Part shown: piece by piece, positions 4,124 to 60,308 of the stretch | How positions within the stretch are numbered: the first letter of the stretch is position 1 | How the letters are laid out: each line of letters opens with the position of its first letter | Source: Macrostomum lignano | Taxonomy: Eukaryota | Assembly (NCBI GenBank): GCA_002269645.1 | Contig: NIVC01000660.1 | Span: 124,001 to 188,000 of the forward strand | DNA: 64,000 bases | Direction: 5' to 3' | Made by a program: the position numbers and the translations under genes | Notes under the pieces: generated by a model | Database searches by the model: none | What the model saw: only the letters and a program-made list of their open reading frames with translations | What the model was told of the DNA's origin: nothing

Positions 4124-4346
4124 CTATAGGTCTGGTCTAAAATCAATAATATGTGAAGCGTCTCTCACCTCGTGCTTGCCGTTTTCGTTAGTTTCATTGA
4201 CGTTGTGGCAGCTGGCGGACAGAGCTGGGTTGGAGTAGGACTGAAATTGCAGGCATTGACAGTGTTGCTTTCGACTGGTTTTGGGTTGGAGACAGAAAAC
4301 AGACAGACAGACAGACACACAGACAGACAGACAAACAGACAGACAC

Positions 4347-4425
<79 letters not shown>

Positions 4426-9965: not shown

Positions 9966-10432
9966 CTATACAGAAATGAATGTTTTTAATTACGCAATGA
10001 TTATTTTTTGATGAACTGGTAGCTTTGATTGCAATTTGAATGCTGAACAAAAAATCACAAAAAATGAAACTGGCTTACCCAAAATCAGGGATGCTATAGC
10101 AAACAATACAAATAGTTTCATTTTTAGTTGGTATCGCAAGATACGTTAATGAAAGCTATGTTTGCAATGAATCGAATGAATAGTCAGATATAAACTTACT
10201 TCCATCAGGAGTCTACATGTACAATATATATGGGCTTCTTGTCCCCCACGTGCCCGTCGCTTAATGCCTTTTACGGCCGTTCGCATGTTGCTCGAGGTGA
10301 GACACGTTGAGGCTGCATTCGTGCCAGCTATAATTAGTCTATAGCATATATGACGCAGGATTGCCTGCTCAGATACCAGTATCAGACAGTGGGTAAGACA
10401 CGCACTTTGTCTTCTTTACATGATTTAATGCA

Positions 10433-13799: not shown

Positions 13800-15026
13800 T
13801 TAAAAATGTGGCATCTCAGGCGGAGAAGGATTATCGGTAATAACAACGGGCAAAGTTGTCTGCTCAGCCAATACTGGGCGCAAATTATCTCTGACAGGCT
13901 GTCTCTGGGTAGACGAATCCATGGTATCCATAGTACGCCTGTGTACTTGGTCGGAGCTTGGATTTCTAAAAACCCGACCGGAAGGAGCCCTGATGGATGA
14001 TCTGGCGCCGGCTTCGCCATCCGATCTGGAACCCAGATCTTCGTGTAGAGAGCCGCAATCAAAAGACGAGTTACCGGAGCTTCCATTGGCTAAATTGTTA
14101 GAGAATGCTTCACTGCAATGGACTGACACGTTGCTAACAGCAGCACTGGCTCCGTTTGGGCTGGAGCTATTGCTTCTGACTGGTGTAGCGACAGCAGCTT
14201 CCACGACGCTTGAATGTGAAGATGACCCGTGAACTTCACCGGAATCTTCTGGGCTTTCTCGAATTGACGAAGCTCGTTCTAATGGTGGCGTAGGCTCCTG
14301 GTGAACGTCAGCATTGATGGACAAGGTTTGGTGTCCGCTGACAGACGTGGGAACCGATACAAAAGGCTCAACAACTGAAGCTTCGTCATTCATGGACTCG
14401 GAGTCTGAATTACGTACGAGCTCCAAGTCATTATTGGTCGGGACGTTCAAAACCGTAGTTTGATCATTTTCAGCTTGTGACTTTTCTTCTTCGTTGAATT
14501 TCGTATCAGTAAACGGATTAAGAGGAATGCCAGCTTCGTTATCGCTTGTCCTACGTTTCTTCTTAGACTTGAATCTCTTACACAAGGGACAAACAATTAT
14601 GACTACAATAACAATAACAATTCCACAGATCACAGGTATCTGCCACGAAAGACTGCTGTTATTCAATGTAGATGTAACTGTTGTCTGAGATGCAACTGTT
14701 GTCTGAGATGTAACAGTTGGCTGAGGTGTAGATACTGACTGTGACTGCATTTGAACTAATGGAGACCTACGAAAAAATTCTGTGCACCGCATTGAATCAT
14801 TGATTTTCTTGCACTTCGAGTAATCAACTGGTTTTATAGGGTCGCTGCAACGACTCTCGATGGTTGAGCATGGCTCGCAAGTGCAGCCAAGCCCTATGTA
14901 TTGAATAGTAGAGTTGCATACAATTTTGCAGCTTGGATCGATTGCATAGCCAATAACGCTCTTTGTAAAGATTGTTATTATAAAGCAGAGGTAGAAGAAA
15001 ACCCGGATTATTAATTGTAACTTCAT
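13800..15026 (-). CDS. Intronless type I membrane protein (408 aa): signal peptide, 8-Cys ectodomain, Thr/Ser stalk, TM, long Ser-rich cytoplasmic tail; TNFR-like candidate
   Basis: Uninterrupted ATG-to-TAA ORF in non-repetitive sequence. It has a hydrophobic N-terminus, Cys cluster CKIVC...CTCEPC...C...C...C, TM IPVICGIVIVIVVIIVC and a basic stop-transfer segment KRFKSKKKRR. The family is not established. Confidence 0.78.
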   Translation of the reverse strand: MKLQLIIRVFFYLCFIITIFTKSVIGYAIDPSCKIVCNSTIQYIGLGCTCEPCSTIESRCSDPIKPVDYSKCKKINDSMRCTEFFRRSPLVQMQSQSVSTPQPTVTSQTTVASQTTVTSTLNNSSLSWQIPVICGIVIVIVVIIVCPLCKRFKSKKKRRTSDNEAGIPLNPFTDTKFNEEEKSQAENDQTTVLNVPTNNDLELVRNSDSESMNDEASVVEPFVSVPTSVSGHQTLSINADVHQEPTPPLERASSIRESPEDSGEVHGSSSHSSVVEAAVATPVRSNSSSPNGASAAVSNVSVHCSEAFSNNLANGSSGNSSFDCGSLHEDLGSRSDGEAGARSSIRAPSGRVFRNPSSDQVHRRTMDTMDSSTQRQPVRDNLRPVLAEQTTLPVVITDNPSPPEMPHF

Positions 15027-15727: not shown

Positions 15728-17894
15728 TACAAACCCTTAATAATACATTAAGTTATTTATTAAGATAGGATATATAGCCAAACATCCTTATATAGGCTCA
15801 GCCTCTAAAAATCATTCACATTAATCATTACATATGAATTAATGACAATAAATGCATAAAATTGCACTATAAGTATAAAAACCTATATGAGATTTCAAGA
15901 ATGTCTTTTTTATATTTCTAATACATAGTATATACCAATGGTATGACAAAATAAATAGAAATATAACATTTTATACCTACTAAAAGAATATTGGCCTTAT
16001 AAGATTACTTACTATTTATTGTAATTTTAACAAAAATCAAATTGATTTTATATATATCTTTCTAAGTTCTTTTAGGAATATAAATAAATATCACAATTGC
16101 TAGCTAACCTAGAAAAATACAAAAATCTTTCTTGAAATCTTGAAAAAAAAGAAAAATCTTGAAAAAAAGCATACTTATTGATAAATCTATGTCTTTAAAA
16201 CAAATCTAATTTTGCATAGAAAGACTGATTTGAATAGGCTCTTTCTAGGGCCTAATAAAACTAGAAAACTAGAAGTATTGCCATTAACTAGGCTTATTTA
16301 GCTTTTTTTCAATAATTATCAATATTTTGTAGGTCCATAATAGAGCAACATTGAACATCAAAGCATATTATTACAAGTACATAGTAGAAGCCTGGGCGAA
16401 GAATATAGCCTTTTTTACACATTAGTCATGGGCCTTAAATGTAGTAAAATGGGCTAGGCATAAACGAATTTATTGTAGATTAAATAGGAGGCACTTTCAT
16501 TTTGAATGCTATGCCATTGTTAGATATTGGATTTTTGTCATCCAAAAAGCAGGACAAAAAAGTGAAATATTTTATGAAAAAATGCTTCGGCCAAGACATG
16601 ATAATAAACATGATTATTCATTGAGAGTGCAAAAGATCTTGACTAAAAAATTAAAAGCTCTAGTCAAAGTCAAGTGACAAATCAAAGACAGTCAGTAACA
16701 GAAAATAAAAGCTATAAAAGTAAAGTTTAAGATATTAATTGGCAGCTTTATAAATTAAATCACTCAAAATCGATAAAAAAAACACAGATGAAAAAACTAC
16801 TTGGTTCTTGGCTTCCAACATGGAACTAAAAAGTCAGCTTCAGCCTTAAGTACGAATCCTCTCGGTACAAGGTTGTACCGAGTACGGCACGAAAATTGAA
16901 ATTTACTAACATTGCGGGCCATTTCTGTTAGCAAATGAGAAGTAAAAACTTCATATTATTTTAAAATTAAAAATAATTATCTACAGGTCTAAATTTACTG
17001 TAACAAATTTACGCTCGTACTTCCGTCGAATATAAATGATTTTTGTTTAAGGTATTCATTGTTGCAGACACCGTTAGCCTTCACTTGTTCTTTTCATTGC
17101 CGATAGCATAACGAGAACATTGAACGACTGAAATACCTTTTTATGTGTAATATTAAACGCCGTTTGATTCCAGTTCTTTGTTGAGAATCTTTATTTTCAA
17201 TTCATGGACCTTTTACTAGATTCATTATTTACTATTATCGTCTCCGGCCACTGCTTCCATTTGTATGTTTACGATAGATTTCTTCAGAGAAGCAGGTTTA
17301 AATGCTTGCTTTTCTAGCGCTCCAGAGAAAAGTAAACTTGCTCTTTGCGGGAAACTTTGTGCTACTCCTGTCTTATTTAATCGCATAGAAAAAATAGCCG
17401 TCGTCGCATGCATGTAAACTTTCATCGGTTCGTACATAAGTACATGCATGTACATGTATAGAATCGAATCGCAATTTTTACGTTTAACCAAATATGCAAG
17501 TAAAATCCTGTGAAAATAGTGCACTCTGACGTGATCTTGGATGATTGGATCTCGAGATGCATTGCCTAATAAAATTTGCACGATCGCAGATCGTGCTGGC
17601 AATGCTTAATGAGAAGTCTGAGATCGAGAATCAGTTCGGAACTTTCATTTTGCTTTTTCCATTTTTGTAATCGGTTACAGTTAGAACTTACTTATGGTTC
17701 CGCGGAGTCCCTTAAATCTTTTCAAAATTGCCTCTGATCTGTTGTATTTGTAATTACACTGTAACACGGGTCCGTAAATACTCCGGGCCGCGGACAAGCG
17801 GCCATCGAAGCCTCTAATCGGCTCCCGGGTCCTTTGAAACTTTGAAATTTAGTAATCTGGCCTGCTCAAGGTTTGTCTCTTCTCAGCTTTCTCT

Positions 17895-17920
17895 TTTTTG
17901 TCTCTCTCTCTCTTCTTTCC

Positions 17921-17983
<63 letters not shown>

Positions 17984-17995
17984 TTCCCTCTCTTC
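17895..17995. repeat. (CT)n microsatellite
   Basis: Direct observation. Confidence 0.95.
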
Positions 17996-18039: not shown

Positions 18040-18159
18040 GTGCGATGCACAATAATGGCGAGCGCAAATATCTCGCTTGCCTTATTCAAACACTGCCTTC
18101 CGATGCAAATTAAATCATTGTTGACGCTGGCCCGGCGGGGCTGCTGGCCTAGCTGGGTG
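18040..18159 (+). mobile_element. Gypsy LTR-retrotransposon pol remnant, left piece (start of RNase H: IIVDAGPAGL)
   Basis: The translation IIVDAGPAG-L joins GALLSQ at 27061+ to rebuild the DASxxGLGAVLxQ RNase H motif. Confidence 0.75.
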
Positions 18160-21100
18160 ACTACTAAGCAACGGCAGATGGCTTGATTTTGGAGGTGAGG
18201 TGGGTGTCAACCCTCCTCGCCTCTCATTGGCTGGCGCCCCGATCACTAGGTGATCGATACCCGTATCGATATCGGCGACTCGAACCCGCGACCCTCCCCA
18301 GCCGCAGGCGCACCTACCGATATTAGATCCCAATAAATCAATCAGATCCCAAATCAATCAGATCCCAAATCAATCAGATCCCAAGCGCACCCTCCCGAGC
18401 CGCAGGCGCACCCTCCCGAGCCGTAGGCGCCCATGCCGCAGACGCCCATGCCGCAGGCACCCCGAGTGTACACTCTACCGAGCCGCAGGCACCCCGAGTG
18501 TACACTCTCCCGAGCCGCAGGCACCCCGAGTGTACACTCTCCCCAGTACGGGTGTACACTCTCCCCAGTACACTCTCCCGATATGTAGTCAACGATACGT
18601 ACCCCGCAGGCACCCTATACCTCACGCCCTGCCCCCACCTAGCCTCTTCCCCTCTCTCACCCACATCTCAACTAGCGAAATCGAACCCAGGTCGCGCCCA
18701 TACTAGGCCACTACACGGTTTGGGGGTATAGGGAGCAAGAAGTTTCTACCCTAACGCTGACGCAGCCCTGTACAGAGAGGCATGTACGGGCAGAGAGGGG
18801 TGGGTGGACAGAGAGACGGCCACTAGGTTATTATACTGTTGAAGCATAGGGAGCGAGAAGTTTTAACCCCGATGCTGACGCAGCCCTGTACAGTGAGCGT
18901 GTACGGGCAGAGGGTGGGTGGAAAGAGATGTGAATAACACAGCCTGCTGCAGGAGCCGGATAGAGAGGCGCATGCTAGGACAGAGAGACAGTGTGAGTCA
19001 CACAAACCCCCACAGAGAGAGCCGTACAGAGGATAGAGAGCTCCCTCCCCAGTTGCAGGGGACAGAGAGGCAGGCAGGGTATGCAGGGGCACGCGAACAG
19101 TCAAGGGGCCACGCGAGGATAGAGTGGAGGAGCAGAGATGTGTATGGACAGAGAGCCGGCCACGCGTGCGTAGTGTGAGGGAACAGAAACATATGGAGCA
19201 GGAGGGAGATAGGAAGCAAACGCGCAGGGTAAAGGAGCCACACAGGGCGGTACAGTGAGACACGGGCAGGGGTGGAGCCGTGCGTGGACAGAGCTGAACG
19301 GCACGGTCGGCTGCAGGAATAGGATGATAGAGAGGCGCGGAGAGGAGGGGACAGAGAGCAGTGTGCAGGGGTAGGCAGCCACGCTGGCAGGGGAACAGAG
19401 GCGCGTGTAGCCAGTTGCAGCCCGGGACAGAGAAGTGTGAAGGGGGCCTGGGACAGAGTTCCGAGCAAGGCACAGAGAGAGGTAGGGTCCGGTAGCTATG
19501 TATAGACAGGGACCCACGCGAGGGCAGGACAGGGGAGTAGACATGCAAGTTGCATGCAAGGCCAGAGAGGTGTGCGCGGAGGGAGACAGAGAGCAGTGTG
19601 TAGGGGTAGGTAACAGCAAACTTTAGTAGAGGTGCGTGCGGGGACGGAGAAACCAGTCTGAGCGTACAGAGCACATGTGTAGGGACAGAGACGTGAGGGA
19701 GAATCGACCAAAACACGCTATGTATTTTCAAAAGTTGGTTTTAGTGCAACATATTTAATAGTGGGTAGTATAATAGTATGTACATAGTAGGTATAATAGT
19801 AGTAATAATGGTAAGTATATTAGCCCAAAAGGTAGGCTAAAACAGGCTAAACTGTGTGTACGCATCCTCATCACCCCACAAGCCCCCTCTCCCGCCAGAC
19901 TCACTCTTCCATACCCTCCTGTATTGCTGTATGAAGGAAAATATAGTGTAAAAATACAGATCTTAACCGTCAGACCGCTGAAATCAGGGCACACTAGAGG
20001 GGTTTCGGGGTCTGCATGCTCTATGTAAGCTGTTTCAATTATGTTTTGAAAAAACTAGGGGCTTAAATACAACGTTTTATTCAAAAAGTAGGTTATTTTA
20101 ATGAAATAGCTGACACAATCATTGTCGAGAGTAGAAATTTTTATAAGAAACCAGGCATTTTAGCAAAAATAAACCTTCAAACCACATAAAATTGAATAAA
20201 AAGCAGACATTTTCAATTATAAACCGCAAGTATTTTAATAGAAAAGTAAGCAAACAAGGCACAAAACCAGCAAATTTTACCTTTTTATTTTAATGTTACT
20301 GATAAGGTAGAGAGTAGAAACTTGTGAGCTGTACGGAGTTAGAAAGTATTAACCATTATGTATCGTATGAATTATTAGTTCAGTACCAGCCATTGGTCAA
20401 GCGAGCATTTATGAAGTTATTACGAGTGATGAAGGGATAGAGAGCTATATACAGGAAGACAGTATCCTTCTAAACCACCACGAACAGATTGCTAATAGAG
20501 ATAAGCTTTGTCTGTGTGCAGTATGAGTAAGCGAAGGCGGGGCAAATACTTTTCCACATACCGGACAGAACAGTATTGTGCTAGGATTTCTCTCGAAATC
20601 ACGGTACGTTACTAGTTTTTATCACACCATCCAGATGCGTCAACTAGTCAGCAGTAGTCATTTATATGTTATTAGAACTTACAAACCCAGGTCAAGTAAA
20701 TATTACAAAGAGTATATTACGTACACACGCCAACTCCGAATACCAAGCCATACTAGTCTACTTGCAGTGCTCCTGGAGGGAAGGGACGGCGGGGTGTACA
20801 CCCGGCAGGGTGGGCGTCCAGCGAGTGTACATCTGACAGGATGGGTGTTCAGCAAGTGTACATCTGACAGGGTGGGCGTTCAGCAAGTGTACCTTCAGCG
20901 TCGAGTAGGTGTACACCCGTCAGTGGGGAACTCCACCCCTCCCACCAATGTCGTGTGCATGCGGTTAGTCAGTATAGTGGTGGGGTAGACGGTGCAGGAA
21001 GGAAACCCAGATGCTGACGCTGCCCTGTACAGCGAGCAACCAGCCCCCCTGTAGCAGGAGGGGGACAGAGAGTGCGTGGAGGCAGTAGGAGATAGAGGAC

Positions 21101-24100
21101 GCTACCCGGCATGTCGCAGCACGCGGCGCGGGACAGAGGCAGTGTGTAAGTCACCCCCGCGGAGAGAGCTCCCCTGGCAGGAGGCGCGGGACAGAGAGGC
21201 GGTGAATCACACCCCACGGAGAGAGCCGTACAACGAGCTTCCCCACCCGAGTCCGGTAAATATTACAGAGTATTACGTGCACACACCAGCCCTGAATACC
21301 AAGCCATACTAGTCTATCTGCAGTGCTCCCAGAGGGAAGGGATGGTCAGGAGTTACACACCAAGAATGCATTCATACAAAGAGTACACAACTCGAGCCCA
21401 GACACCAAGTCACAGTCTACTTACAGTAGAGATGGTAGATTAATAGCAAGATTATATTACAATTAGACCTCTCTAGCACATGAGGAGTGAAATTCAATAA
21501 TAATTGAATTCAATAATAATACAACATTTAGACGTAGTAATTTAATTACAAAATACCACTAACACTGAGCCAACGAATTGTAGGTTACAAAGGAGTTGCC
21601 ACTCATATGGAAAGCCAGTATAATGCAGGTGTGTATTATTAAAACATAGACAAAAACGATGCAGACGTATATACACACTATTGATTTTGTACATGTACAT
21701 TTCGGCATATTACCACACATCGCGGGCACATATTATATATCGGGGGATAGGTTAAAATACACACATCGTAGATGTAGAAGCAGACACAATGCAGGAAAAT
21801 TATGATACGAGTGTACATATTAGTGCGTAAAAGTATCATATTATGACACCCTGTAGCACATATTGACATAATGCAGGGGAAAATATTGACAGAAATAGTA
21901 CACAATTGTAGAGGTAACAACCAGCCAACTAGTAAGGGCATCCAGCACTTGTTCAGGTTTTTTTTATTTCGAGACGAGTGTCATGCCCCCGCAAGAGATC
22001 TTATCAGAAATTTGTTGAACTCCACTGCAACTCTCCCAGAGCCTCCAAATGGGAGTTTTAACACTTGAGGGGATCCCGCTCAATGTACAGTGCGGACGGA
22101 GAGGGGTAACAGAAAGCGCTGCATCAGACCGCGGAGCTGCATTCCTCCCCCGAGGTAGGCGCGTCAGCTCCCACTCCTCATTTAACCATCAAGTAAACTA
22201 AAGAAGTCAAGCAGAAAGCCTTACAATCACCCGCAACCAGCACAAGTAAGAGTACTTTCCACTAGAGAGCCATAGTGCAAGATTCGCGAGCCAAGTTGAA
22301 GAAGCACACCAAATTACACTAAAGACATATGTATTAAAAAGCATACCGGCACCTCTACAAAAACACAGTATGTACCGATTAAAGTTGCTTTTGGTGCAGT
22401 GTATTTAATAAAAAGCAGGTACCTAACACAAAAGTAGGCATCAATGCAGTGCACGGGCTAAACTGTATTTACAAACGCAGGGCAACGAACTACACACAAT
22501 GTAGCGCATAGACATAATTGTACACATAAATGTACGCAATCTCCGGTATATAGGACCAAATGTACGCAAATGTACACAATGCACACAAACACACACACAC
22601 TCAGGCGCATCCTGCAGCGCATCCTGCAGCACCGATCGCCGCAGGCGATGGCGCCATCGGCAGGAAGCTCTTGCTGTGAATACGCCTGAGTGTGTGTGTG
22701 TTTGTGTACATTGTGTACATTTGCGTACATTTGGTCCTATATACCGGAAATTGCGTACATTTATGTGTACAATTATGTCTATGCGCTACATTGTGTGTAG
22801 TTCGTTGCCCTGCGTTTGTAAATACAGTTTAGCCCGTGCACTGCATTGATGCCTACTTTTGTGTTAGGTACCTGCTTTTTATTAAATACACTGCACCAAA
22901 AGCAACTTTAATCGGTACATACTGTGTTTTTGTAGAGGTGCCGGTATGCTTTTTAATACATATGTCTTTAGTGTAATTTGGTGTGCTTCTTCAACTTGGC
23001 TCGCGAATCTTGCACTATGGCTCTCTAGTGGAAAGTACTCTTACTTGTGCTGGTTGCGGGTGATTGTAAGGCTTTCTGCTTGACTTCTTTAGTTTACTTG
23101 ATGGTTAAATGAGGAGTGGGAGCTGACGCGCCTACCTCGGGGGAGGAATGCAGCTCCGCGGTCTGATGCAGCGCTTTCTGTTACCCCTCTCCGTCCGCAC
23201 TGTACATTGAGCGGGATCCCCTCAAGTGTTAAAACTCCCATTTGGAGGCTCTGGGGAGAGTTGCAGTGGAGTTCAACAAATTTCTGATAAGATCTCTTGC
23301 GGGGGCATGACACTCGTCTCGAAATAAAAAAAAACCTGAACAAGTGCTGGATGCCCTTACTAGTTGGCTGGTTGTTACCTCTACAATTGTGTACTATTTC
23401 TGTCAATATTTTCCCCTGCATTATGTCAATATGTGCTACAGGGTGTCATAATATGATACTTTTACGCACTAATATGTACACTCGTATCATAATTTTCCTG
23501 CATTGTGTCTGCTTCTACATCTACGATGTGTGTATTTTAACCTATCCCCCGATATATAATATGTGCCCGCGATGTGTGGTAATATGCCGAAATGTACATG
23601 TACAAAATCAATAGTGTGTATATACGTCTGCATCGTTTTTGTCTATGTTTTAATAATACACACCTGCATTATACTGGCTTTCCATATGAGTGGCAACTCC
23701 TTTGTAACCTACAATTCGTTGGCTCAGTGTTAGTGGTATTTTGTAATTAAATTACTACGTCTAAATGTTGTATTATTATTGAATTCAATTATTATTGAAT
23801 TTCACTCCTCATGTGCTAGAGAGGTCTAATTGTAATATAATCTTGCTATTAATCTACCATCTCTACTGTAAGTAGACTGTGACTTGGTGTCTGGGCTCGA
23901 GTTGTGTACTCTTTGTATGAATGCATTCTTGGTGTGTAACTCCTGACCATCCCTTCCCTCTGGGAGCACTGCAGATAGACTAGTATGGCTTGGTATTCAG
24001 GGCTGGTGTGTGCACGTAATACTCTGTAATATTTACCGGACTCGGGTGGGGAAGCTCGTTGTACGGCTCTCTCCGTGGGGTGTGATTCACCGCCTCTCTG

Positions 24101-27060
24101 TCCCGCGCCTCCTGCCAGGGGAGCTCTCTCCGCGGGGGTGACTTACACACTGCCTCTGTCCCGCGCCGCGTGCTGCGACATGCCGGGTAGCGTCCTCTAT
24201 CTCCTACTGCCTCCACGCACTCTCTGTCCCCCTCCTGCTACAGGGGGCTGGTTGCTCGCTGTACAGGGCAGCGTCAGCATCTGGGTTTCCTTCCTGCACC
24301 GTCTACCCCACCACTATACTGACTAACCGCATGCACACGACATTGGTGGGAGGGGTGGAGTTCCCCACTGACGGGTGTACACCTACTCGACGCTGAAGGT
24401 ACACTTGCTGAACGCCCACCCTGTCAGATGTACACTTGCTGAACACCCATCCTGTCAGATGTACACTCGCTGGACGCCCACCCTGCCGGGTGTACACCCC
24501 GCCGTCCCTTCCCTCCAGGAGCACTGCAAGTAGACTAGTATGGCTTGGTATTCGGAGTTGGCGTGTGTACGTAATATACTCTTTGTAATATTTACTTGAC
24601 CTGGGTTTGTAAGTTCTAATAACATATAAATGACTACTGCTGACTAGTTGACGCATCTGGATGGTGTGATAAAAACTAGTAACGTACCGTGATTTCGAGA
24701 GAAATCCTAGCACAATACTGTTCTGTCCGGCATGTGGAAAAGTATTTGCCCCGCCTTCGCTTACTCATACTGCACACAGACAAAGCTTATCTCTATTAGC
24801 AATCTGTTCGTGGTGGTTTAGAAGGATACTGTCTTCCTGTATATAGCTCTCTATCCCTTCATCACTCGTAATAACTTCATAAATGCTCGCTTGACCAATG
24901 GCTGGTACTGAACTAATAATTCATACGATACATAATGGTTAATACTTTCTAACTCCGTACAGCTCACAAGTTTCTACTCTCTACCTTATCAGTAACATTA
25001 AAATAAAAAGGTAAAATTTGCTGGTTTTGTGCCTTGTTTGCTTACTTTTCTATTAAAATACTTGCGGTTTATAATTGAAAATGTCTGCTTTTTATTCAAT
25101 TTTATGTGGTTTGAAGGTTTATTTTTGCTAAAATGCCTGGTTTCTTATAAAAATTTCTACTCTCGACAATGATTGTGTCAGCTATTTCATTAAAATAACC
25201 TACTTTTTGAATAAAACGTTGTATTTAAGCCCCTAGTTTTTTCAAAACATAATTGAAACAGCTTACATAGAGCATGCAGACCCCGAAACCCCTCTAGTGT
25301 GCCCTGATTTCAGCGGTCTGACGGTTAAGATCTGTATTTTTACACTATATTTTCCTTCATACAGCAATACAGGAGGGTATGGAAGAGTGAGTCTGGCGGG
25401 AGAGGGGGCTTGTGGGGTGATGAGGATGCGTACACACAGTTTAGCCTGTTTTAGCCTACCTTTTGGGCTAATATACTTACTATTATTACTACCATTATAC
25501 CTACTATGTACATACTATTATACTACCCGCTATTAAATATGCTGCACTAAAACCAACTTTTGAAAATACATAGCGTGTTTTGGTCTATTCTCCCTCACGT
25601 CTCTGTCCCTACACGTGCTCTGCCCGCTTTGGTCTCTGTTTGTGTACCTCTCTGTAACGTCTCTGTACGCTCAGACTGGTTTCTCCGTCCCCGCACGCGC
25701 CTCTACTAAAGTTTGCTGTTACCTACCCCTACACACTGCTCTCTGTCTCCCTCCGCGCACACCTCACTGCCCTTGCATGTAATTTGCATGCCTTGCATGC
25801 CCTGTCCTGCCCTCGCGTGGGTCCCTGCCTATACATAGCTACCGGACCCTACCTCTCTCTGTGCCTTGCTCGCAACTCTGTCCCAGGCCCCCCTTCATAC
25901 TTCTCTGTCCCAGGCCCCCCTTCATACTTCTCTGTCCCGGGCTGTAACTGGCTGACACGCGCCTCTCTGTTCCCCAGCCTGCGTGGCTGCCTACCCTGCA
26001 CACTGCTCTCTGTCCCCCTCCGCGCCTCTCTATCATCCTATTCCTGCAGCTGACCGTGCCGTTCAGCTCTGTCCACGCACGGCTCCACCCCTGCCCGTGT
26101 CTCACTGTACACTGCTCCCTGCTGCATGGCTCCCTTACCCTGCGCGTTTGCTTCCTATCTCCCTCCTGCTCCATATGTTTCTGTTCCCTCACACTACGCA
26201 CACGTGGCTGGCTCTCTGTCCAAACACATCTCTGCTCCTCCACTCTATCCTCGCGTGGCCCCTTGACGGTTCGCATGCCCCTGCATACCCTGCCTGCCTC
26301 TCTGTCCCCTGCAACTGGGGAGGGAGCTCTCTATCCTCTGTATGGCTTTCTCTGTGGGGTGTGTGTGACTCACACTACCTCTCTGTCCTAGCATGCGCCT
26401 CTCTATCCGGCTCCTGCAGCAGGCTGTGTTATTCACATCTCTTTCCACCCACCCTCTGCCCGTACACGCTCAGTGTACAGGGCTGCGTCAGCATCGGGGT
26501 TAAAACTTCTCGCTCCCTATGCTTCAACAGTATAACAACCTAGTGGCTGGTTCTCTGTCCGCCCCACCCCTCTCTGCCCGTACACTCTCACTGTACAGGG
26601 CTGCGTCAGCGTTAGGGTTGAAACTTCTCGCTCCCTATACCCCACAACCGTGTAGTGTCCTAGTATGGGCGCGACCTGGGTTCGATTTCGCTAGTTGAGA
26701 TGTAGGTGAGAGAGGGGAAGAGGCCCGTATCGATGACTACATATCGGTGTACACACATATCGGGAGAGTGTACACTCGGGGTGCCTGCGGCATGGGCGCC
26801 TGCTGCATGGGCGCCTGCGGCTCGGGAGGGTGCGCTTGGGATCTGATTGATTTGGGATCTGATTGATTTGGGATCTGATTGATTTATTGGGATCTAATAT
26901 CGGTAGGTGCGCCTGCGGCTGGGGAGGGTCGCGGGTTCGAGTCGCCGATATCGATACGGGTATCGATCACCTAGTGATCGGGGCGCCAGCCAATGAGAGG
27001 CGAGGAGGGTTGACACCCACCTCACCTCCAAAATCAAGCCATCTGCCGTTGCTTAGTAGT
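18160..27060. mobile_element. 8.9-kb palindromic (fold-back) insertion with 6-bp TSD; candidate non-autonomous Polinton/Maverick-like element
   Basis: Arms 18160-22607 and 22683-27060 are reverse complements (mirror ORFs 20578..20988+/24303..24713-, 21678..21941-/23297..23614+). Termini are ACTACTAAGC...GCTTAGTAGT and the TSD is TGGGTG (18154-18159, 27061-27066). No recognisable protein. The structure is certain; the superfamily is inferred. Confidence 0.9.
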
Positions 27061-28500
27061 TGGGTGCACTTCTATCGCAGACGCAATTTGGGCGGGAACC
27101 AGGCTAGCCCATCGCATACGCTAGTCGGACACTGTCAAATATCGAGCAACGCTATTCATAAACAAAGTTACAGAGAAATTAAAGATGCATTGGCTGTGAA
27201 GTTCGGCTGTCTAAGTTTCAATTCTATCTCCACAGCGCGCCGATATTCACGGTGCAAACGGACAACAAGCCACTGGTTGCTCTGTTCGGCAGCATGGTTC
27301 GAGACCTTTCCCAAGAATCGAAGGGATGGCATTGCGCATTTAGCATCTGAAATTCACAGTTGAGTACCAGCCGGGCCCGCTCAACCTGGCAGACGTGCCT
27401 AGCTGGCAGCCCCTGCCGACACCCGCCCGAATGTGGGCAAAGAGCTGGATGCCCTTTCCATCGCCGCTGTTGTGCAGGCGGCCGTACGTCCAAATGTGCT
27501 GTCGATCGCCAGCTTACAGGAGAGATCGCGAAAGGACACACCAATTCAAGCGGCGATTCGCGCCTTGGAGACAGGGCGTTGGAGTCTGGAGTCAGCAGAA
27601 CGGCGGTCGCTGCATGCGCTGCGTCAGGAACTGTGCAGTGGGCGGGGTGCTCCTACGGGACCAGCGAATCGTCGTCCCGGTGGCGCTCCGACGGCTGGTA
27701 CTGGATCTAGCGCAACGGCCGGCACCAGTGCGTACGCAAGACGCTGGGACCGGCTGAACACCAAGGTCTGGAACTTTTCAAATAAAGATGGAGCGCTTCG
27801 TAGCCGTGTGCCAGGCCTGACTGGCCGCTGAATCCGACGCCTATCCCGAATGCGGCATGGCTGACGCTCGGTGCGGATCTGCTCGGACCCATTCAAGGCA
27901 GCATACTGCTAGTCTGCGTCGATCAATACTTCCGATTTTCCGAGGTGAAGGTCAAACGTTAGTCACTGACAATGGTCCACCGCGTTCGCTTCAGCCCAGT
28001 TTAAGAGCTACGGAATCCGTCAGCTCCTCATCATGAATCGTTCCATTAAGAAGGTGGTGCGCTCTGCAATTGCACAGAAGCGCGACTGGAGAGCGGCCAT
28101 TGACGAGTTGCTGCTGTCCTTTCGATGCACGCCTTAGCGAACAACTGGACCGGTGGTCAAATCATGGACCGGCAGCTTCCGCGCAGCGCGAAGCAGCTCG
28201 AAAGACGCAATGCGAACGGATTTAGACAGACCAGAAGCGACTGGCGAGATCGCACAAGCTCAAGGTTTGCGACACTGAATCCGCTCAAGGAAGACACGCC
28301 GTTCGAGTGGGACCCCTGGCTTATCGATGAGGAGATCAAGGCGGACTCGGTGACGATACGACAGGGTGACAGAGTTTGGCGGCCAGCTGAACTAAGTTCT
28401 GCGTGGCGCATTGCTCGAACAGTTGCCGATCTCTCAGGTTGTGATCAGTCAACAATTTGCTCAGGATGCTCGCAGGTGGGAAAACACGACGAGAAAAGCA
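27061..28500 (+). mobile_element. Degenerate Gypsy pol: RNase H and integrase remnants
   Basis: Frameshifted motifs GALLSQ, PIAYASRTLSNIEQRY, ALAVKFGC, FTVQTDNKPLV, RIVVPVALRRLVLDLA, LGADLLGPIQGSILLVCVDQYFRFSEV, VTDNGP and NRSIKK. Confidence 0.9.
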
Positions 28501-28509
28501 GATTGAGGG

Positions 28510-30900
28510 ATTCCTCGGCGGTTCTGGAATAGTTGCCATCCAAATGAAGGAGGGAGTTGCACTGGGCGAAGTTTGTCGTGTCTGAGGGACTTCACCAGCC
28601 GGGCTGTGGGATGCTGGCCCTCCAAACCAGCGCAGAAAGCCTTCCAGGTGTCCTTTTTGGCCTTCCGGATACAGCTCTTGTAGGTTCTCAAACCTGAGTG
28701 GTAGATCTCCCAGTCTTCTGGGGTGTTATTCTGGTTGGCCATCCGATGCAGCCGACGGGAGGTCTTTTTCAAACGGGTGAGATCTTTATTCCACCAAAGT
28801 GAGTACTTCTTCCTACTGACAATAAGAGGGGCGTTTTTCACCGTGGCCGCATTTAGCAGCTCGACAAGCTTGTTGCAACGGGCTTCAATGCTCGGGATTG
28901 CTTCGCAACCGTTCAGGTCTTCGGCCGGTTCGCTGCTGATCAGAGACTCAAGGTCCCTTCTGAAGCCAGCCCAGTCCGCTCTTTTTAAATTGGGACGGTT
29001 CGCCTTGGTGACGCGAGCGCCGCCAGCTGTGACACTGAAATGGATATAGAAATGGTCCGAGAGCGAGGGGGATGTCGTCCAAAGGACTACTCAAGTTGTC
29101 CTTGATGTCGTCTCTGACCATCCAATTTTGAATCCGGTTAAGGATGTTACTGGACGCAAGGGTGAGATCAATGACCTCTTTCCTGCTAACGTTCGCAAAG
29201 GTGGGTTTGCGCCCTTTAGTTGCAAATGTGCAGATTCGAGGTGTTAATGAAGTTAATAAGCATACTACCACTGAGGTTAGTGTTACGGCTAGCCCACACA
29301 GTGTTGTGAGCATTCGCATCGCAGCCAATAATGAGGTTTTTGTTCTCGATGTTACAGAAATTGGCGAGATCCTGCAGGAGGGGTGACGGAAGTTCATTCT
29401 GAATATCCATGTACACGGACGAGAAGATCATCCCGTTCACGGTGAAGGTACAAATGTCTTTATTGCAAAACATCGGCATGAGCATGGCTGGGAGCTTGCG
29501 CTTGACCAGGGCAATGGCTCTAGGGGTTTCACGTCTAGAGAGGGAGAGGATCTGGTAGCCTTTCGGCAGCAGGGTGGGCTTACCCTCACGGTGTAGGGCT
29601 GCTGAATGAGGTAGATGTCCACACCGGTGCCACCAAGGGTGTCGGTCAGGCTGCTGGAGGCTGCGACCGGGTGGCGCAGGTTGATCTGCACAATATGCAG
29701 GTTAGGATCACTGTTTTGCGTGAGCGTGGTAATATCATAATTGGGCCCACCCGGAGGGTTGGCCCTCAGACGGTCACGCCTCATCATAGATGATCTGGGC
29801 ATGGCGGTGGTGCGCTTCCTCCTCGGGATGAGGTGGAAGATTATCTTCCATGCACCAACGTAGGCGGCGTGGTCGTTACCTTGCATGTAGCGCTCCCAGT
29901 CGGCAGAGAGGCCCATGTAGAGGGTTTTTCCGTTGCCATCTTTGGCCGGCACCTCCTTGAAAGCCCGGAGGCCGTCCGCAGGCAACTCGGGTGCTTGGCG
30001 ACAAGACGACCGCGGATCTCCTCGATCGTCCTAGCCCCTGAATAGAAGGCCCTGTACCTCTTACAGGGAGGCGGAGGGCGAGCCTTCTCAACGACCAGCT
30101 CCGGGAGCTGTGCCTTGGAAGTACCCCAGTCGATGCTGGGCAGGTTAGCTAAGGCGGTGTTCGAATGTTCTTCGCTCTTAAAGGCGAGAATGAGATTGCT
30201 ATTGGCGTATCTAACAGACTCGACCTCAACACCGATATGGTCGTTATCCCAGAGGAAGTCGTCAGCATGGGCGACGGCGCCTTCCATCTGGGCATCGCTC
30301 AGTGTCCCACTGGCCGCGCGGACACAGATTTTATGGAGGGGTAGCAACCGCGGGGTTCACGGAGAGCTGCGGGAGTTGCCGGCTCCCTAGCCGGAAAAGA
30401 TTTTTGCTCAGAATCCATAGAGAATAGCTGAAACGGGGAAGAAACACAAATTAGAAAAGGCAGACCTACCGCTCAGGGACTGGATATACACCCAGTCAGC
30501 CAGAGGCTACCCCCTGCCACGGCGAACAGCAGGAAGGCTTTGGGTTACCGTCTTAGCCCAGGATTGCTCCCAGGCGACCAGGCGAGGCTCCGGCAGGCCC
30601 CCGTTTCACACTCCACAAGATCAGGGGGCGGGAGGCCGGCTACGGGCTTGGCACACAAACGCCAGGTCGGGTTGACAGCCGACGCCCGAGCCTTCCCCCG
30701 CAGGTGCGGCCCTCGAGAACCCATGCGGTACCAGTTGCAACTATGGGCTGTCGATGGGTAGTTAGCGCTTAGCCAGCAGCCAACTACTTAGCAGCCACCT
30801 GCCCTGCAAAAAGGCAGCAGGGGGGATCCGTCCTCCACCAGCAGACCAAAACGAAGAAGCTGGACGCTTCCACGCCAAGCCAGAGCGAAAGAGGAGGGGG
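28510..30900 (-). mobile_element. Non-LTR retrotransposon 5' half (R1/LOA-like): 5' UTR, ORF1, APE endonuclease, linker; RT absent
   Basis: Motifs IVQINLRH...[23 protein letters not shown]...RKEVIDLTLAS, SDHFYI and WWNKDL...[17 protein letters not shown], with several frameshifts. Boundaries are approximate. Confidence 0.85.
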
Positions 30901-31243
30901 AAAAGCCTCCTCGAAAAACGAAAAACGAAAAAACTAAAAACAGAGTCCCTCGGTTTAAGTTGCCATTTCTAATAGCGCCGGGGTCTCCTGGTAGTGTCAC
31001 TGTCTCCTGGTAAGTCACTGTCTCCTGGTAGCATCGGGTCTCCTGGTAGCGCCTCTGTCTCAAAAGTTCAACAGAATGAAGAGCAGCGGCAAAACCGGCA
31101 GTTAAACTCGCGCCAACTGGCATGCACTGCTTCATCAGGCCAAGGCCAAGGAGCCTGAAGAGCAACAGTTAGCGATGTAGTGGTAGTAGAAATTTCGTAG
31201 AATTTATAACTTTGTTTGTAAAACAGTTTGCAAAAAAGATGGC

Positions 31244-32100
31244 TTAAGCGATGTCTTCAAGAAGAGAAACTTGGGTTCCCAAATGAAACGATATAGGTGT
31301 AAAGTTGCTCGCTTGGCAAGTAAGATGAATAGGAAGGCAAAAATCAACATTTAATGAATTTAATTGAACGACTCGTTTCGCACGATACTGTGCATCTTCA
31401 GGTTTATTTTTGAGCGAAAGAAACGAGCGAGATCGGCAGTAAATAAATACAAAATTTTGGGGTGTAAATTCAATCCATATTTGAAGTACATGTTTGTTGG
31501 TCCAAAAGTCGAGAGGCAAAGTGCAGGCCCGGAATGATAGCGATATAGTTAGAAGTATATAATGTACATCTAGTGTCCCCTCCCTCAGAACACACGGAGA
31601 ACATGTCCCGCGCCACTGTGTCGGAGTTGAGTGTTGAGGTTGGGGGAATGCGCTTTAATGTACAGCGCTTCAAGTATCTGGAGTTTGGAGTCAAATGAGC
31701 ATTGATCAATGTCTTTGAAGCGCTCTTCGGGTTTGCAGTTGGAGCAACTATTACACTCTAAGAGATGGTTTTGGATAGCCGACGGTTTCAGCCAGTGCTC
31801 CCTGATTCTAGTGTGCAGGTGCCTTTTTGTCTTCCCCACGTAGGAGACGCTCTGGTCATCAGAGCAGTTGAACTGATAAACGACACGAGTACGAAGAGCA
31901 CAGGGAACACGTGACTTCAACCGACCGACAAAGTTGCCAACCTTAGCAGAACGAAAGATGACACGGATGTTGCAATTAAGCGAGTTGCGGAACAATTTGC
32001 AGATTTTATTTTTGAAAAGTTAAGAAGGATAGCCAAAGAAAGGGAGGACAAGAGTTGGTTCGTTGAGATCGATGGGATCAGCTTTAAGGCTTTTGGGTGA
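31244..32100 (-). mobile_element. Penelope-like element 3' end: GIY-YIG endonuclease (31585-31995) plus 3' UTR/pLTR
   Basis: VVYQFNC...YVGKTKRHLHTRIREH...ILEALYIK..PNLN, preceded by LVLPFFG with one stop. Truncated on the 5' side at ~32100. Confidence 0.9.
31362..31409 (-). ncRNA. Minimal type I hammerhead ribozyme in the Penelope 3' region
   Basis: Minus strand reads aac-CUGAAGA-u-gcac(aguauc)gugc-GAAAC-ga-GUC-guu. The core is intact, stem II is 4 bp, stem III is minimal and stem I is aac/guu. Predicted cut between 31370 and 31369. Confidence 0.78.
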
Positions 32101-34686: not shown

Positions 34687-35270
34687 TCATTTCCACATTG
34701 TCCGTTTACTAGCCTGCTTACATCCTGTTTTTACTAATCTTTGCTTGAAAAATGAAATGACAACACGATTCGACTGGCCGCAGGCTTCAATTCTCATCAC
34801 CTTGTCAGGTGGACCAGAAACGGTAGTAACTCCATTTTCACTCGTGCTAGTAGCCTCGCTTGGTTGGCGCACACTTTGGCCACTGAGAACAGCACTTACT
34901 TGTTTTTGCCGATTGACCGATGGTGCAATGTAGCGTTCGAGGGCTTTCGCGCTTGAATGTCCCGTTACTTGGGCGATATCGCCTCGCTCAATCCCAGCTT
35001 CGTGCAACTCAGTCGCGCAAATTTTTCGCAAGCTCTGATTGGTAAATCTACCAGATCCTTCAAGTCGAACGGATGCAACAGCGTCCCGCACTAAAGTCGA
35101 CAGCGTATTTCTACCGATCTGACCAACAGTAAACCAGGATGTAGCGCTTTCCGTTGTCCAATTCTTGTTCGCCGAGAGAAAAAGAGCAGGTTGCACAGTT
35201 TTCTGGACGCAAACTCGCATATTTGCGATAAACGCAAACGATGCATTTTTCACAATCGGCATTCACATTC
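34687..35270 (-). pseudogene. C-terminal third of a second Crypton-type tyrosine recombinase (frameshifted)
   Basis: KCIVCVYRKYASLRPENC, a frameshift at ~35190, then ALFL...RFTNQSLRKICATEL...VTGHSS...LERYI...MRIEACGQSNRVVISFF. It is colinear with the 35652-37018 protein. Confidence 0.8.
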
Positions 35271-60211: not shown

Positions 60212-60252
<41 letters not shown>

Positions 60253-60257
60253 CTGCC

Positions 60258-60308
<51 letters not shown>

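What the first reader, a model, noticed from the sequence alone, without database searches (positions are those of the whole stretch)
22601..22690. Central spacer folds like a viral hairpin telomere (branched, alternative hairpins)
Seen: the spacer 22608-22682 has a 12-bp direct repeat (gcgcatcctgca x2), CCGAT/ATCGG pairing on the global symmetry axis, and two overlapping alternative hairpins (atcgcc-gca-ggcgat and the palindrome cgatggcgccatcg). It also carries the gccgcaggcg motif found in the element's terminal repeats. Known: parvovirus and poxvirus hairpin ends are imperfect or branched, and replication through a hairpin gives a head-to-head inverted dimer. Inference: the insert could be the unfolded duplex of a ~4.45-kb linear molecule with one covalently closed hairpin end and one ACTACT open end.
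Basis: partly seen in the sequence, partly recalled or inferred. Interest (0 to 1): 0.75.

Follow-up and report, generated by a model that had tools for sequence, protein, structure and literature searches.

The report
Gene-less palindromic mobile element's centre
The 75-base stretch is the lopsided middle of an 8.9-kb gene-less mobile DNA insertion built from one end copied head-to-head; it does not fold like a viral hairpin end, though the insertion's tips and 6-base target duplication resemble virus-like Maverick/Polinton elements.

Summary
The spacer 22608-22682 is the asymmetric centre of an 8,901-bp near-palindrome (18160-27060).

- **Insertion:** it has (ACT)2/(AGT)2 tips and a perfect 6-bp target duplication (TGGGTG), so it went in as one unit.
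- **Coding:** no Pfam domain appears in any of the six frames.
- **Fold:** the spacer alone folds no better than shuffles on the + strand (z -0.8). It is marginal and unbranched on the - strand (z -2.0).
- **Symmetry:** only 14 of 37 positions pair about the global axis.
- **Shared 10-mer:** its match to the subterminal repeats is within chance.
- **Arms:** they are a mosaic. The outer 244 bp are identical, the next 1.4 kb differ by about 4.7% plus 14 indels, and the inner 2.8 kb differ by about 0.1%.

Best reading: a foldback-type, non-autonomous element made from one end region by a fold-back (hairpin-primed) copy. The spacer would be the leftover loop. A 6-bp duplication plus an iterated tip is the published end pattern of Mavericks/Polintons, though with a different triplet.

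A parvovirus- or poxvirus-like telomere is not supported. No other copy was found in any collection, so family-level tests remain open.

The parts
18154..18159 (.). Left copy of the 6-bp target-site duplication TGGGTG
   Evidence: the last 6 bases of the left flank equal the first 6 of the right flank. A 7-bp repeat does not fit. Chance for this exact register is 4^-6 (own arithmetic).
27061..27066 (.). Right copy of the 6-bp target-site duplication TGGGTG
18160..18165 (+). Left tip, trinucleotide ACT iterated twice
   Evidence: ACTACTAAGCAACGG occurs only at the two tips in the window (2 hits, 0.09 expected). The pattern matches the published Maverick end-motifs (PMC8097293), but with another triplet.
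27055..27060 (-). Right tip, the same (ACT)2 read on the minus strand ((AGT)2 on the plus strand)
18160..22607 (+). Left arm of the palindrome (4,448 bp), non-coding
   Evidence: aligns with the reverse complement of 22683-27060. No Pfam domain in six frames. No inverted repeats inside one arm.
22683..27060 (-). Right arm of the palindrome (4,378 bp)
18160..18403 (+). Terminal block, 244 bp, identical in both arms (partner 26817-27060)
   Evidence: (I4), 16, 71: 0 mismatches where about 11 would be expected at the rate of the next block.
18325..18571 (+). Subterminal tandem repeats (16-, 21-, 15-, 32- and 22-bp units) carrying GCCGCAGGC[G/A] and GTGTACAC; the partner array at 26760-26885 has fewer copies
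18404..19810 (+). Diverged block (partner 25481-26816): 66 mismatches in about 1.4 kb (4-7.5% per 200 bp) and 14 indel events
   Evidence: Only 14 of 70 mismatches are CpG transitions.
19811..22607 (+). Near-identical inner block (partner 22683-25480): 3 transitions and 3 single-base homopolymer length differences in 2.8 kb
22608..22682 (.). Asymmetric central spacer, 75 nt, 63% GC (the finding)
22605..22630 (+). 12-bp tandem duplication (2.2 copies) straddling the arm/spacer border
22635..22659 (.). Two overlapping small self-complementary motifs: a 6-bp stem with 3-nt loop (22635-22649) and a 14-bp palindrome (22646-22659)

Best explanation
The finding is the centre of an 8,901-bp gene-less, foldback-type mobile element (18160-27060). 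The element consists of one end region present twice, head to head.

**Shown**
- It was inserted as one unit: identical tips abut a perfect 6-bp target duplication.
- It encodes no recognisable protein.
- Its arms have a block-wise history.
- Its 75-nt centre is asymmetric, compositionally unlike the adjoining arms, and not significantly structured.

**Inferred**
- The inverted dimer arose when a molecule, or a broken copy, carrying only one functional end folded back on a short self-complementary stretch. The 3' end was then extended along its own strand, and the resulting hairpin was copied open. The spacer is the loop that could not pair, so it is a scar and not a working telomere.
- The element depends on enzymes supplied by an autonomous relative elsewhere.
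- The combination of a 6-bp target duplication and a short unit iterated at the very tip, (ACT)2, is the published end signature of Maverick/Polinton elements. These use a retrovirus-like integrase and protein-primed replication with 'jumping back'. I therefore think that enzymology is the most likely one, at roughly even odds.
- The identical outer 244 bp would be the part kept alike because both ends must work. The 1.4-kb diverged block is either older inverted-repeat sequence or a patch converted from another family copy. The near-identical inner 2.8 kb is the recent fold-back copy, in other words an inward extension of the inverted repeat.
For: **Insertion as a unit**
- The palindrome, tips and target duplication are seen.
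- No part of the element recurs elsewhere in the window.

**No coding capacity**
- Six-frame Pfam scan of 18160-22690: no family.
- The longest arm ORF has 0 hits among 1.84 billion representative proteins.

**Arm mosaic**
- The mismatch steps are sharp, at about 18404 and about 19810.
- CpG decay does not explain it. Nor does GC content: a 58-66% GC stretch inside the inner block has 0 mismatches.

**Spacer**
- Its fold and symmetry are at or near chance.
- It is 63% GC, against 39% in the adjoining arm sequence.
- It has no significant match to the arms.

**Literature**
- Maverick end-motifs are 5'-(AGT)2//(ACT)2-3', (AG)3//(CT)3 and (AC)3A//T(GT)3, with perfect 6-bp duplications, and are tied to jumping-back priming (PMC8097293).
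- Polinton inverted repeats span 100-1,500 bp with 5-8-bp duplications (PMC10748475).
- Butterfly polintons have ~2-kb inverted repeats that took in internal genes (bioRxiv 10.1101/2025.02.07.637071).
- A Galileo copy of 9,021 bp consists only of two 4.2-4.7-kb inverted repeats with tandem repeats. [quoted passage not shown]
- Fold-back priming at short inverted repeats with unpaired spacers gives hairpin-capped ends that replicate into inverted duplications (PMC10622511).
- Small protein-primed (adenoviral) vector genomes are packaged as direct and inverted dimers (PMC4189039).
Against: - There is only one copy. No relative was found in any collection searched, so family membership, centre variability and the partner element are untested.
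- The tip triplet is ACT on the 5' strand, whereas published Mavericks have AGT, AG or AC units. The match is to the pattern and not to the letters.
- No Maverick gene (polymerase, integrase, capsid, protease, ATPase) appears in the element, or among window ORFs of at least 130 aa outside it and its low-complexity repeat arrays.
- 4.4-kb arms are about three times the longest inverted repeats reported for Mavericks.
- Gene-less Maverick derivatives did not surface in the papers read (in the lizard Anolis they are noted as apparently absent; PMC3014272).
- Subterminal tandem repeats are also typical of cut-and-paste transposons.
- A single fold-back copy predicts fully identical arms, so the diverged block needs a second event.
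Confidence: 0.5

Rival explanations
1. The architecture is the same, but the element is an ordinary cut-and-paste foldback transposon, comparable to Drosophila FB or the long-inverted-repeat copies of Galileo. It would be moved by a DDE transposase of a superfamily that makes 6-bp duplications, and the (ACT)2 tip would be coincidence.
For: - Long inverted repeats filled with subterminal tandem repeats.
- A recurring palindromic octamer GTGTACAC, with 10 of its 12 window hits inside the element.
- A near-twin in size and layout exists in Galileo copy 112: 9,021 bp, only two inverted repeats, no transposase (PMC4168063).
- No viral gene in or near the element.
Against: - Described foldback-like families make 7-9-bp duplications: Galileo 7-8 bp, and FB and Tm1 9 bp (own knowledge). 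None makes 6 bp.
- Dada makes 6-7 bp but has no terminal inverted repeats and targets small-RNA genes (PMC3706591).
- A tip that is an exact 2x trinucleotide or 3x dinucleotide is expected in only about 2% of random hexamers (own arithmetic).
Confidence: 0.3
2. The inner palindrome and its spacer arose in place, after insertion. An older element with ~1.7-kb inverted repeats and a unique interior suffered a break. It was then repaired by fold-back synthesis that ended by annealing within the opposite inverted repeat. This is a one-off rearrangement and not a property of a family.
For: - There is a sharp step from 4-7% to about 0.1% divergence at about 19810.
- The centre is asymmetric, as in fold-back inversions (PMC10622511).
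- Galileo extends its inverted repeats by recruiting internal sequence.
Against: - The outer 244 bp are identical although the adjacent 1.4 kb differ by 4.7%. The probability of this under uniform in-place divergence is about 8e-6 (own arithmetic).
- Simple in-place ageing of old repeats therefore does not fit without an added conversion event or constraint.
- Timing cannot be told from one copy.
Confidence: 0.25
3. One reading: the insert is the integrated, unfolded replicative form of a ~4.45-kb linear replicon. That replicon would keep a covalently closed, structured (parvovirus- or poxvirus-like) hairpin telomere at one end.
For: - The geometry is a head-to-head dimer with a short asymmetric centre.
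- The centre contains small self-complementary motifs.
- The - strand fold is marginally better than shuffles (z -2.0).
- The unit size is in the parvovirus range.
Against: - No replication or capsid gene, nor any other domain, in six frames.
- The + strand fold is at chance and the best fold is unbranched.
- 14 of 37 axis pairs.
- The spacer is GC-rich.
- One arm block is 4.7% diverged.
- The target duplication and iterated tips fit integrase-type insertion.
- Nothing matches IMG/VR.
Confidence: 0.05
4. Assembly artefact: a chimeric fold-back long read, or mis-joined haplotypes, created a palindrome that does not exist in the genome.
For: - The inner 2.8 kb is almost perfect.
- Its only length differences are single bases in homopolymers, a typical long-read error.
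Against: - Both flanks are unique and different, and carry a perfect target duplication next to identical tips.
- The outer arms differ by 66 substitutions and 14 indels. A read-level fold-back could not produce that.
Confidence: 0.05

Closest known systems
Foldback-like long-inverted-repeat transposons (Drosophila FB; Galileo of the P superfamily, e.g. D. willistoni copy 112)
   Same: - The element consists almost only of two multi-kb inverted repeats around a short centre.
- The repeats contain tandem repeats.
- There is no transposase gene.
- It is flanked by identical target duplications.
- The ends are better conserved than the rest.
- The inverted repeats can grow by taking in internal sequence (PMC4168063).
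   Different: - The target duplication is 6 bp here, against 7-8 bp in Galileo.
- The tip here is an iterated trinucleotide.
- No sequence relation could be tested.
- The host is an unidentified non-Drosophila animal. Its TM9SF exon is only about 70% identical to any database protein.
Maverick/Polinton virus-like elements
   Same: - Perfect 6-bp target duplication.
- Terminal inverted repeats.
- A short unit iterated at the extreme tip, read in the literature as the mark of jumping-back, protein-primed replication (PMC8097293; PMC10748475).
   Different: - None of the defining genes is present.
- The element is 8.9 kb, against 13-25 kb.
- The arms are 4.4 kb, against 1.5 kb or less.
- The triplet is ACT and not AGT, AG or AC.
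- The whole element is a palindrome of one end.
Fold-back (snap-back) inverted duplications from hairpin-capped DNA ends (yeast, tumours; Tetrahymena rDNA palindrome, the last from own knowledge)
   Same: A large palindrome with a short unpaired centre, which is the former loop between short inverted repeats. The arms are identical next to the centre (PMC10622511).
   Different: Those are chromosome-scale rearrangements. This palindrome is bounded by element tips and a target duplication, so it moved, or was inserted, as a discrete unit.
Parvovirus and poxvirus hairpin telomeres
   Same: Replication through a hairpin yields a head-to-head dimer junction. Small internal palindromes are present.
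   Different: - No viral genes.
- The spacer fold is not significant and not branched.
- It is not an imperfect palindrome about the axis.
- It is GC-rich.
- Flip/flop isomers are not testable.

Membership tests
Parvovirus-type hairpin telomere | A terminal palindrome that folds into a stable T- or Y-shaped (branched) hairpin | tested here: not met
   The spacer alone gives z -0.8 on the + strand and z -2.0 on the - strand. The - strand fold is a single unbranched hairpin. The two small motifs overlap and exclude each other.
Parvovirus-type hairpin telomere | A Rep/NS1 nickase-helicase gene and a capsid gene in the ~4-6-kb unit | tested here: not met
   No Pfam family in any of six frames of 18160-22690.
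Parvovirus-type hairpin telomere | Flip and flop orientations of the asymmetric centre among genomes | not testable with these tools
   Only one copy exists in the window, and none was found in any collection.
Poxvirus-type hairpin telomere | An A+T-rich, incompletely paired hairpin whose unfolded form is an imperfect palindrome about the junction axis | tested here: not met
   The spacer is 63% GC. 14 of 37 positions pair about the axis, a count reached by 8.6% of shuffles.
Maverick/Polinton | 6-bp target-site duplication | tested here: met
   TGGGTG at 18154-18159 and 27061-27066. Feature as defined in PMC8097293.
Maverick/Polinton | Terminal inverted repeats | tested here: met
   The arms are 18160-22607 and 22683-27060. 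They are far longer than the reported 46-1,500 bp.
Maverick/Polinton | A short unit iterated at the extreme termini (end-motif) | tested here: inconclusive
   The tip is 5'-(ACT)2//(AGT)2-3'. Published motifs are (AGT)2, (AG)3 and (AC)3A at the 5' end. The pattern is the same but the unit differs.
Maverick/Polinton | Genes for protein-primed polymerase B, retrovirus-like integrase, capsid proteins, protease and ATPase | tested here: not met
   None in the element. None among the window ORFs of at least 130 aa scanned outside it; ORFs within low-complexity repeat arrays were not scanned. At most this is a gene-less dependant, not an autonomous member.
Foldback / Galileo-like transposons | Very long inverted repeats containing tandem repeats, with a short or absent middle | tested here: met
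   Compare Galileo copy 112.
Foldback / Galileo-like transposons | Target duplication of 7-9 bp | tested here: not met
   The duplication is exactly 6 bp. A 7-bp repeat does not fit.
Foldback / Galileo-like transposons | Ends shared with an autonomous copy that encodes a P- or Mutator-type transposase | not testable with these tools
   No eukaryotic genome or repeat library is available, and no relative was found.
Dada transposons (6-7-bp duplication) | No terminal inverted repeats; insertion inside small-RNA genes | tested here: not met
   The element has inverted repeats. There is no tRNA and no Rfam family at gathering score at the site. Features as defined in PMC3706591.
Fold-back inverted duplication | An asymmetric unpaired centre between arms that are identical next to it | tested here: met
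   A 75-nt spacer, with the inner 2.8 kb differing by 3 transitions and 3 homopolymer bases.
Fold-back inverted duplication | A single-copy progenitor with a short inverted repeat flanking the future spacer | not testable with these tools
   No monomeric relative is available.

The most novel reading that the evidence does not exclude
The element is a 'copy-back' defective derivative of a Maverick/Polinton-like virus-like element. It would be one end region (replication origin plus integrase site) folded back and copied into a gene-less palindrome with two identical working ends. It would then be carried and inserted by the enzymes of an intact relative. This would be the DNA-element counterpart of snap-back defective genomes, preserved as a chromosomal insertion in an animal genome.
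Probability: 0.3. Interest if true: 0.65.

Novelty: new variant of a known kind. Interest (0 to 1): 0.38.

Why it matters
The claim as made, that the spacer is a viral hairpin telomere, does not hold, so by itself the spacer is ordinary.

The element around it is of moderate interest. Foldback-type elements and Mavericks/Polintons are both known. A gene-less, fully palindromic element with a Maverick-type end signature was not described in the papers I could read.

If a family of such elements exists, three things would follow:
- Virus-like, protein-primed elements would be shown to spawn parasitic 'ends-only' dependants, as cut-and-paste transposons spawn MITEs.
- It would give a natural example of inverted-repeat growth by fold-back copying.
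- It would flag a class of repeats that standard annotation, which is gene-based for Mavericks, would miss.

A 2.8-kb near-perfect palindrome is also a likely source of hairpin RNA and of local genome fragility.

Tried and rejected
**Searches for other copies (all empty)**
- BLAST of the arm and spacer against the rest of the window.
- Exact scans with the 22-mer tip, a 24-mer repeat unit, a 24-mer spacer core and two 24-mers from the identical terminal block. Four scans were of IMG/VR and two of JGI metagenomes.
- The 90-aa ORF that spans the spacer, against 5.8 billion proteins.
- The 302-aa arm ORF, against 1.84 billion representatives.
- Exact-product look-ups for the spacer ORF, the neighbouring 408-aa ORF and the 96%-identical forkhead protein.

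**Host identity: not obtained**
- The TM9SF exon is about 70% identical to proteins from many animal groups.
- The forkhead ORF has one unnamed 96% hit, then 60% or less.

**Other tests**
- Rfam gave only a mir-3149 match far below its gathering score, on the (CA)n/(TG)n stem.
- ARAGORN found no tRNA. My impression of tRNA-like T-arm strings in the subterminal region is therefore unsupported.

**Explanations rejected for the arm mosaic**
- CpG decay: only 14 of 70 mismatches are CpG transitions.
- Base composition: a GC-rich inner stretch has 0 mismatches.

**Other rejections**
- The shared 10-mer as evidence that the spacer derives from the terminal repeats (shuffle control).
- Dada.
- The right flank as a recognisable gag or other domain.
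- No literature support was found in the held library for gene-less Maverick derivatives. Nor was any found for one-ended palindromic adenoviral genomes, beyond the dimer statement in PMC4189039. What I recall of that older work is own knowledge and unverified.
Full report
**1. What is at the coordinates**

The stretch 22601-22690 is the centre of a very large inverted repeat.
- The arms are 18160-22607 and 22683-27060. They pair up to 22607/22683, so the symmetry axis is at 22645.0.
- The quoted letters are all present:
  - the 12-mer GCGCATCCTGCA in 2.2 tandem copies at 22605-22630;
  - the 6-bp stem with 3-nt loop at 22635-22649;
  - the 14-bp perfect palindrome at 22646-22659;
  - the 10-mer GCCGCAGGCG at 22638-22647.
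- One detail is off. CCGAT and ATCGG pair about 22646, not about the global axis.
- The hairpin apex (22642) and the palindrome centre (22652.5) are also off-axis.

**2. Is the centre more than chance?**

Mostly it is not.
- **Fold on the + strand.** Folded alone as DNA, the 75-mer gives -16.8 kcal/mol against -14.7 +/- 2.6 for dinucleotide shuffles (z -0.8). 42 of 200 shuffles fold at least as well.
- **Fold on the - strand.** It gives -19.3 kcal/mol (z -2.0, 6 of 200). The fold is a single unbranched imperfect hairpin.
- **The impressive z of -5.6.** The value for 22590-22700 exists only because 18 bp of each arm are included.
- **Small motifs.** A loopless palindrome of this size appears in 2.2% of shuffles. 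Any stem of 7 bp or more with a loop of 8 nt or less appears in 10%.
- **Symmetry.** Only 14 of 37 positions pair about the global axis, a count reached by 8.6% of shuffles.
- **The shared 10-mer.** It does occur only in the subterminal repeats and the spacer (5 hits, 0.04 expected). But the proper control is how well any shuffled spacer matches a 4.4-kb arm. That gives scores of 20.5 +/- 2.2 (maximum 29), against 23 observed. The match carries no weight.
- **The one non-random feature.** This is the 12-bp tandem duplication, a slippage-type event that straddles the arm/spacer border.
- **Composition.** The spacer is 63% GC, while the 300 bp of arm on either side are 39%.

**3. The element around it**

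- **Ends.** The palindrome ends sharply at 18160 and 27060 with identical tips, ACTACTAAGCAACGG.... That string occurs nowhere else in the window.
- **Target duplication.** The six bases outside each tip are the same direct repeat, TGGGTG. A 7-bp repeat does not fit. For that exact register the chance is 4^-6 (own arithmetic). The 8,901 bp were therefore inserted as one unit.
- **Empty site.** Joining the flanks with one TGGGTG gives the putative empty site. It leaves a 212-codon open stretch over the junction. Part of that stretch is encoded by a (TC)n run, and the right-hand piece has no Pfam match. I draw nothing from it.
- **Coding.** The unit encodes nothing recognisable.
  - No Pfam family appears in six frames.
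  - The ORFs are low-complexity.
  - The longest ORF has no relative among 1.84 billion representative proteins.
- **Internal structure.** One arm contains no inverted repeat of its own, so the monomer is a half-element and not a complete transposon.
- **Repeats.** Each arm carries:
  - subterminal tandem repeats of 15-32 bp (18325-18571);
  - further dispersed direct repeats;
  - a strong excess of the palindromic octamer GTGTACAC, with 10 of its 12 window hits inside the element.

**4. The arms are a mosaic**

The global alignment has 4,297 aligned pairs, 70 mismatches and 17 indel events.

| Block (left arm) | Length | Differences between arms |
|---|---|---|
| 18160-18403 (outer) | 244 bp | none |
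| 18404-19810 | about 1.4 kb | 66 mismatches (a flat 4-7.5% per 200 bp) and 14 indel events, mostly repeat-unit copy number |
| 19811-22607 (inner) | 2.8 kb | 3 transitions and 3 single-base homopolymer differences |

- The steps between blocks are sharp.
- CpG decay does not explain the pattern: only 14 of 70 mismatches are CpG transitions.
- Composition does not explain it either: the 58-66% GC stretch at 20800-21200 has no mismatch.
- Uniform ageing in place would leave 244 bp untouched with probability of about 8e-6 (own arithmetic).
- The three blocks therefore have different histories. The inner part is a young copy.
- The middle block is either older inverted-repeat sequence or a patch converted from another family copy.
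- The outermost part has been kept or made identical.
- Either reading of the middle block implies that relatives exist or existed in the genome.

**5. What it most likely is**

Architecturally this is a foldback-type, non-autonomous mobile element.
- The closest documented look-alike is a Galileo copy in Drosophila willistoni. It is 9,021 bp and consists only of two inverted repeats of 4,246 and 4,680 bp, with tandem repeats and no transposase.
- In Galileo generally, ends are better conserved than the rest, and the repeats are extended by recruitment of internal sequence (PMC4168063).
- That family makes 7-8-bp duplications. The host here is not a fly: its TM9SF exon is only about 70% identical to anything in the database.

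Two end features point elsewhere.
- A perfect 6-bp duplication plus a short unit iterated at the very tip is the published end signature of Mavericks/Polintons. The published motifs are 5'-(AGT)2//(ACT)2-3', (AG)3//(CT)3 and (AC)3A//T(GT)3. The iteration is interpreted as the template for 'jumping back' in protein-primed replication (PMC8097293; see also PMC10748475, and PMC3014272).
- Here the tip is 5'-(ACT)2//(AGT)2-3'. The pattern is the same and the triplet is different.
- An exact 2x3 or 3x2 iteration is expected in about 2% of random hexamers (own arithmetic).
- Among DNA-transposon superfamilies, few make 6-bp duplications. Dada does, but it lacks inverted repeats and targets small-RNA genes (PMC3706591).

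I therefore put roughly even odds on the element being a gene-less dependant of a Maverick/Polinton-like element, and about 0.3 on an ordinary cut-and-paste foldback transposon. It is not an autonomous Maverick, because none of the defining genes is present in the element. None was found among the window ORFs of at least 130 aa scanned outside it either; ORFs within low-complexity repeat arrays were not scanned.

**6. How the centre arose (inferred)**

- The standard route to a large palindrome with a short unpaired middle has four steps. A 3' end folds back on a short inverted repeat. It is extended along its own strand. The end becomes hairpin-capped. The next replication then opens it into an inverted duplication whose centre is the former loop (PMC10622511).
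- In that work, repeats of 3-15 bp and loops of tens of bases suffice.
- For a linear, end-primed element, the same event on a molecule retaining only one end would create a palindrome with two identical working ends.
- Small protein-primed (adenoviral) vector genomes are indeed packaged as direct and inverted dimers, and subgenomic packaged DNA carries only one end (PMC4189039).
- Butterfly polintons have ~2-kb inverted repeats that swallowed internal genes (bioRxiv 10.1101/2025.02.07.637071).
- On this reading the spacer is a scar. Its small palindromes and the 12-bp duplication are by-products, and no function need be sought in its fold.
- Whether the fold-back happened before insertion (family property) or in place (one-off) cannot be told from one copy.

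**7.

- The geometry is right: a head-to-head dimer, most simply made through a hairpin intermediate.
- The specific claim, a structured and branched parvovirus- or poxvirus-like telomere of a small linear replicon, fails every test that could be run:
  - the fold is not significant and not branched;
  - the spacer is not an imperfect palindrome about the axis;
  - it is GC-rich;
  - the unit has no genes;
  - one arm block is diverged;
  - nothing matches IMG/VR.
- Flip/flop isomers could not be tested.

**8. Limits**

- No second copy was found in the window or in IMG/VR (4 scans).
- None was found in JGI metagenomes (2 scans) or the two protein collections.
- None was found in the contig index.
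- The host species is evidently not represented in these collections, and no eukaryotic repeat library was available.
- The family-level predictions are therefore open, and the assignment of enzymology rests on two end features and on the literature.
- An assembly artefact is unlikely, given unique flanks, the target duplication and the diverged outer arms. Read-level confirmation was not possible.

**9. Verdict**

- The thing itself is a gene-less palindromic mobile element with a Maverick-type end signature. I rate it a new variant of known kinds, of moderate interest.

Noticed in passing
window 7285-10050 and 57391-59500: Two long minisatellites: about 110 copies of a 21-bp unit and about 92 copies of a 22-bp unit. 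They create spurious ORFs of up to 921 aa.
   Followed up: no
window 4290-4430 and 60200-60425: Two short-period low-complexity arrays, 56 kb apart, are reverse complements of each other at 90-95% identity. This is probably the same simple repeat in opposite orientation.
   Followed up: no
window 34687-35262 and 35652-36815 (minus strand): Two adjacent ORFs with tyrosine-recombinase signatures: Phage_integrase, and DUF3504 plus weak Phage_integrase. This is the domain set of Crypton-type elements or their domesticated derivatives.
   Followed up: partly
window 41801-42274 and 43494-44237 (plus strand): Two exons of a TM9SF (EMP70) gene. The best database identity is about 70%, to proteins from many animal groups, so the host is an animal without close relatives in the collections.
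   Followed up: partly
window 48391-49125 (minus strand): A forkhead-domain gene of the FoxG/slp/fkh-2 type. One unnamed Metaclust protein is 96% identical, and all other hits are 60% or less. Next to it, at 47030-48145, lies a cysteine-rich ORF with zf-C2HCIx2C and weak Vanabin-2 matches.
   Followed up: partly
window 27061-32000: The right flank of the element is retroelement debris. It holds a weak endonuclease/reverse-transcriptase match (28948-29397) and a GIY-YIG ORF of the kind found in Penelope-like elements (31585-31995).
   Followed up: partly
window 13800-15026 (minus strand): An intact 408-aa ATG ORF with an N-terminal hydrophobic leader, a Cys-rich part, a Thr/Ser-rich stretch and one hydrophobic span. 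It has only sub-threshold Pfam matches and no exact product on record.
   Followed up: partly
window 18160-27060: The palindromic octamer GTGTACAC is about 28 times denser in the element than in the rest of the window (10 of 12 hits). It lies in several of the tandem-repeat units and near the centre, so it could be a protein-binding motif.
   Followed up: partly
window 17890-17993: A (TC)n microsatellite lies 165 bp left of the insertion site. The joined flanks leave a 212-codon open stretch across the empty site, partly encoded by this repeat.
   Followed up: partly
window 20675-20790 and 21235-21345 (mirrored at 23947-24057 and 24502-24616): Each arm contains a ~556-bp-spaced direct duplication (75-87% identical). 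This shows an older internal duplication that predates the inverted copy.
   Followed up: no
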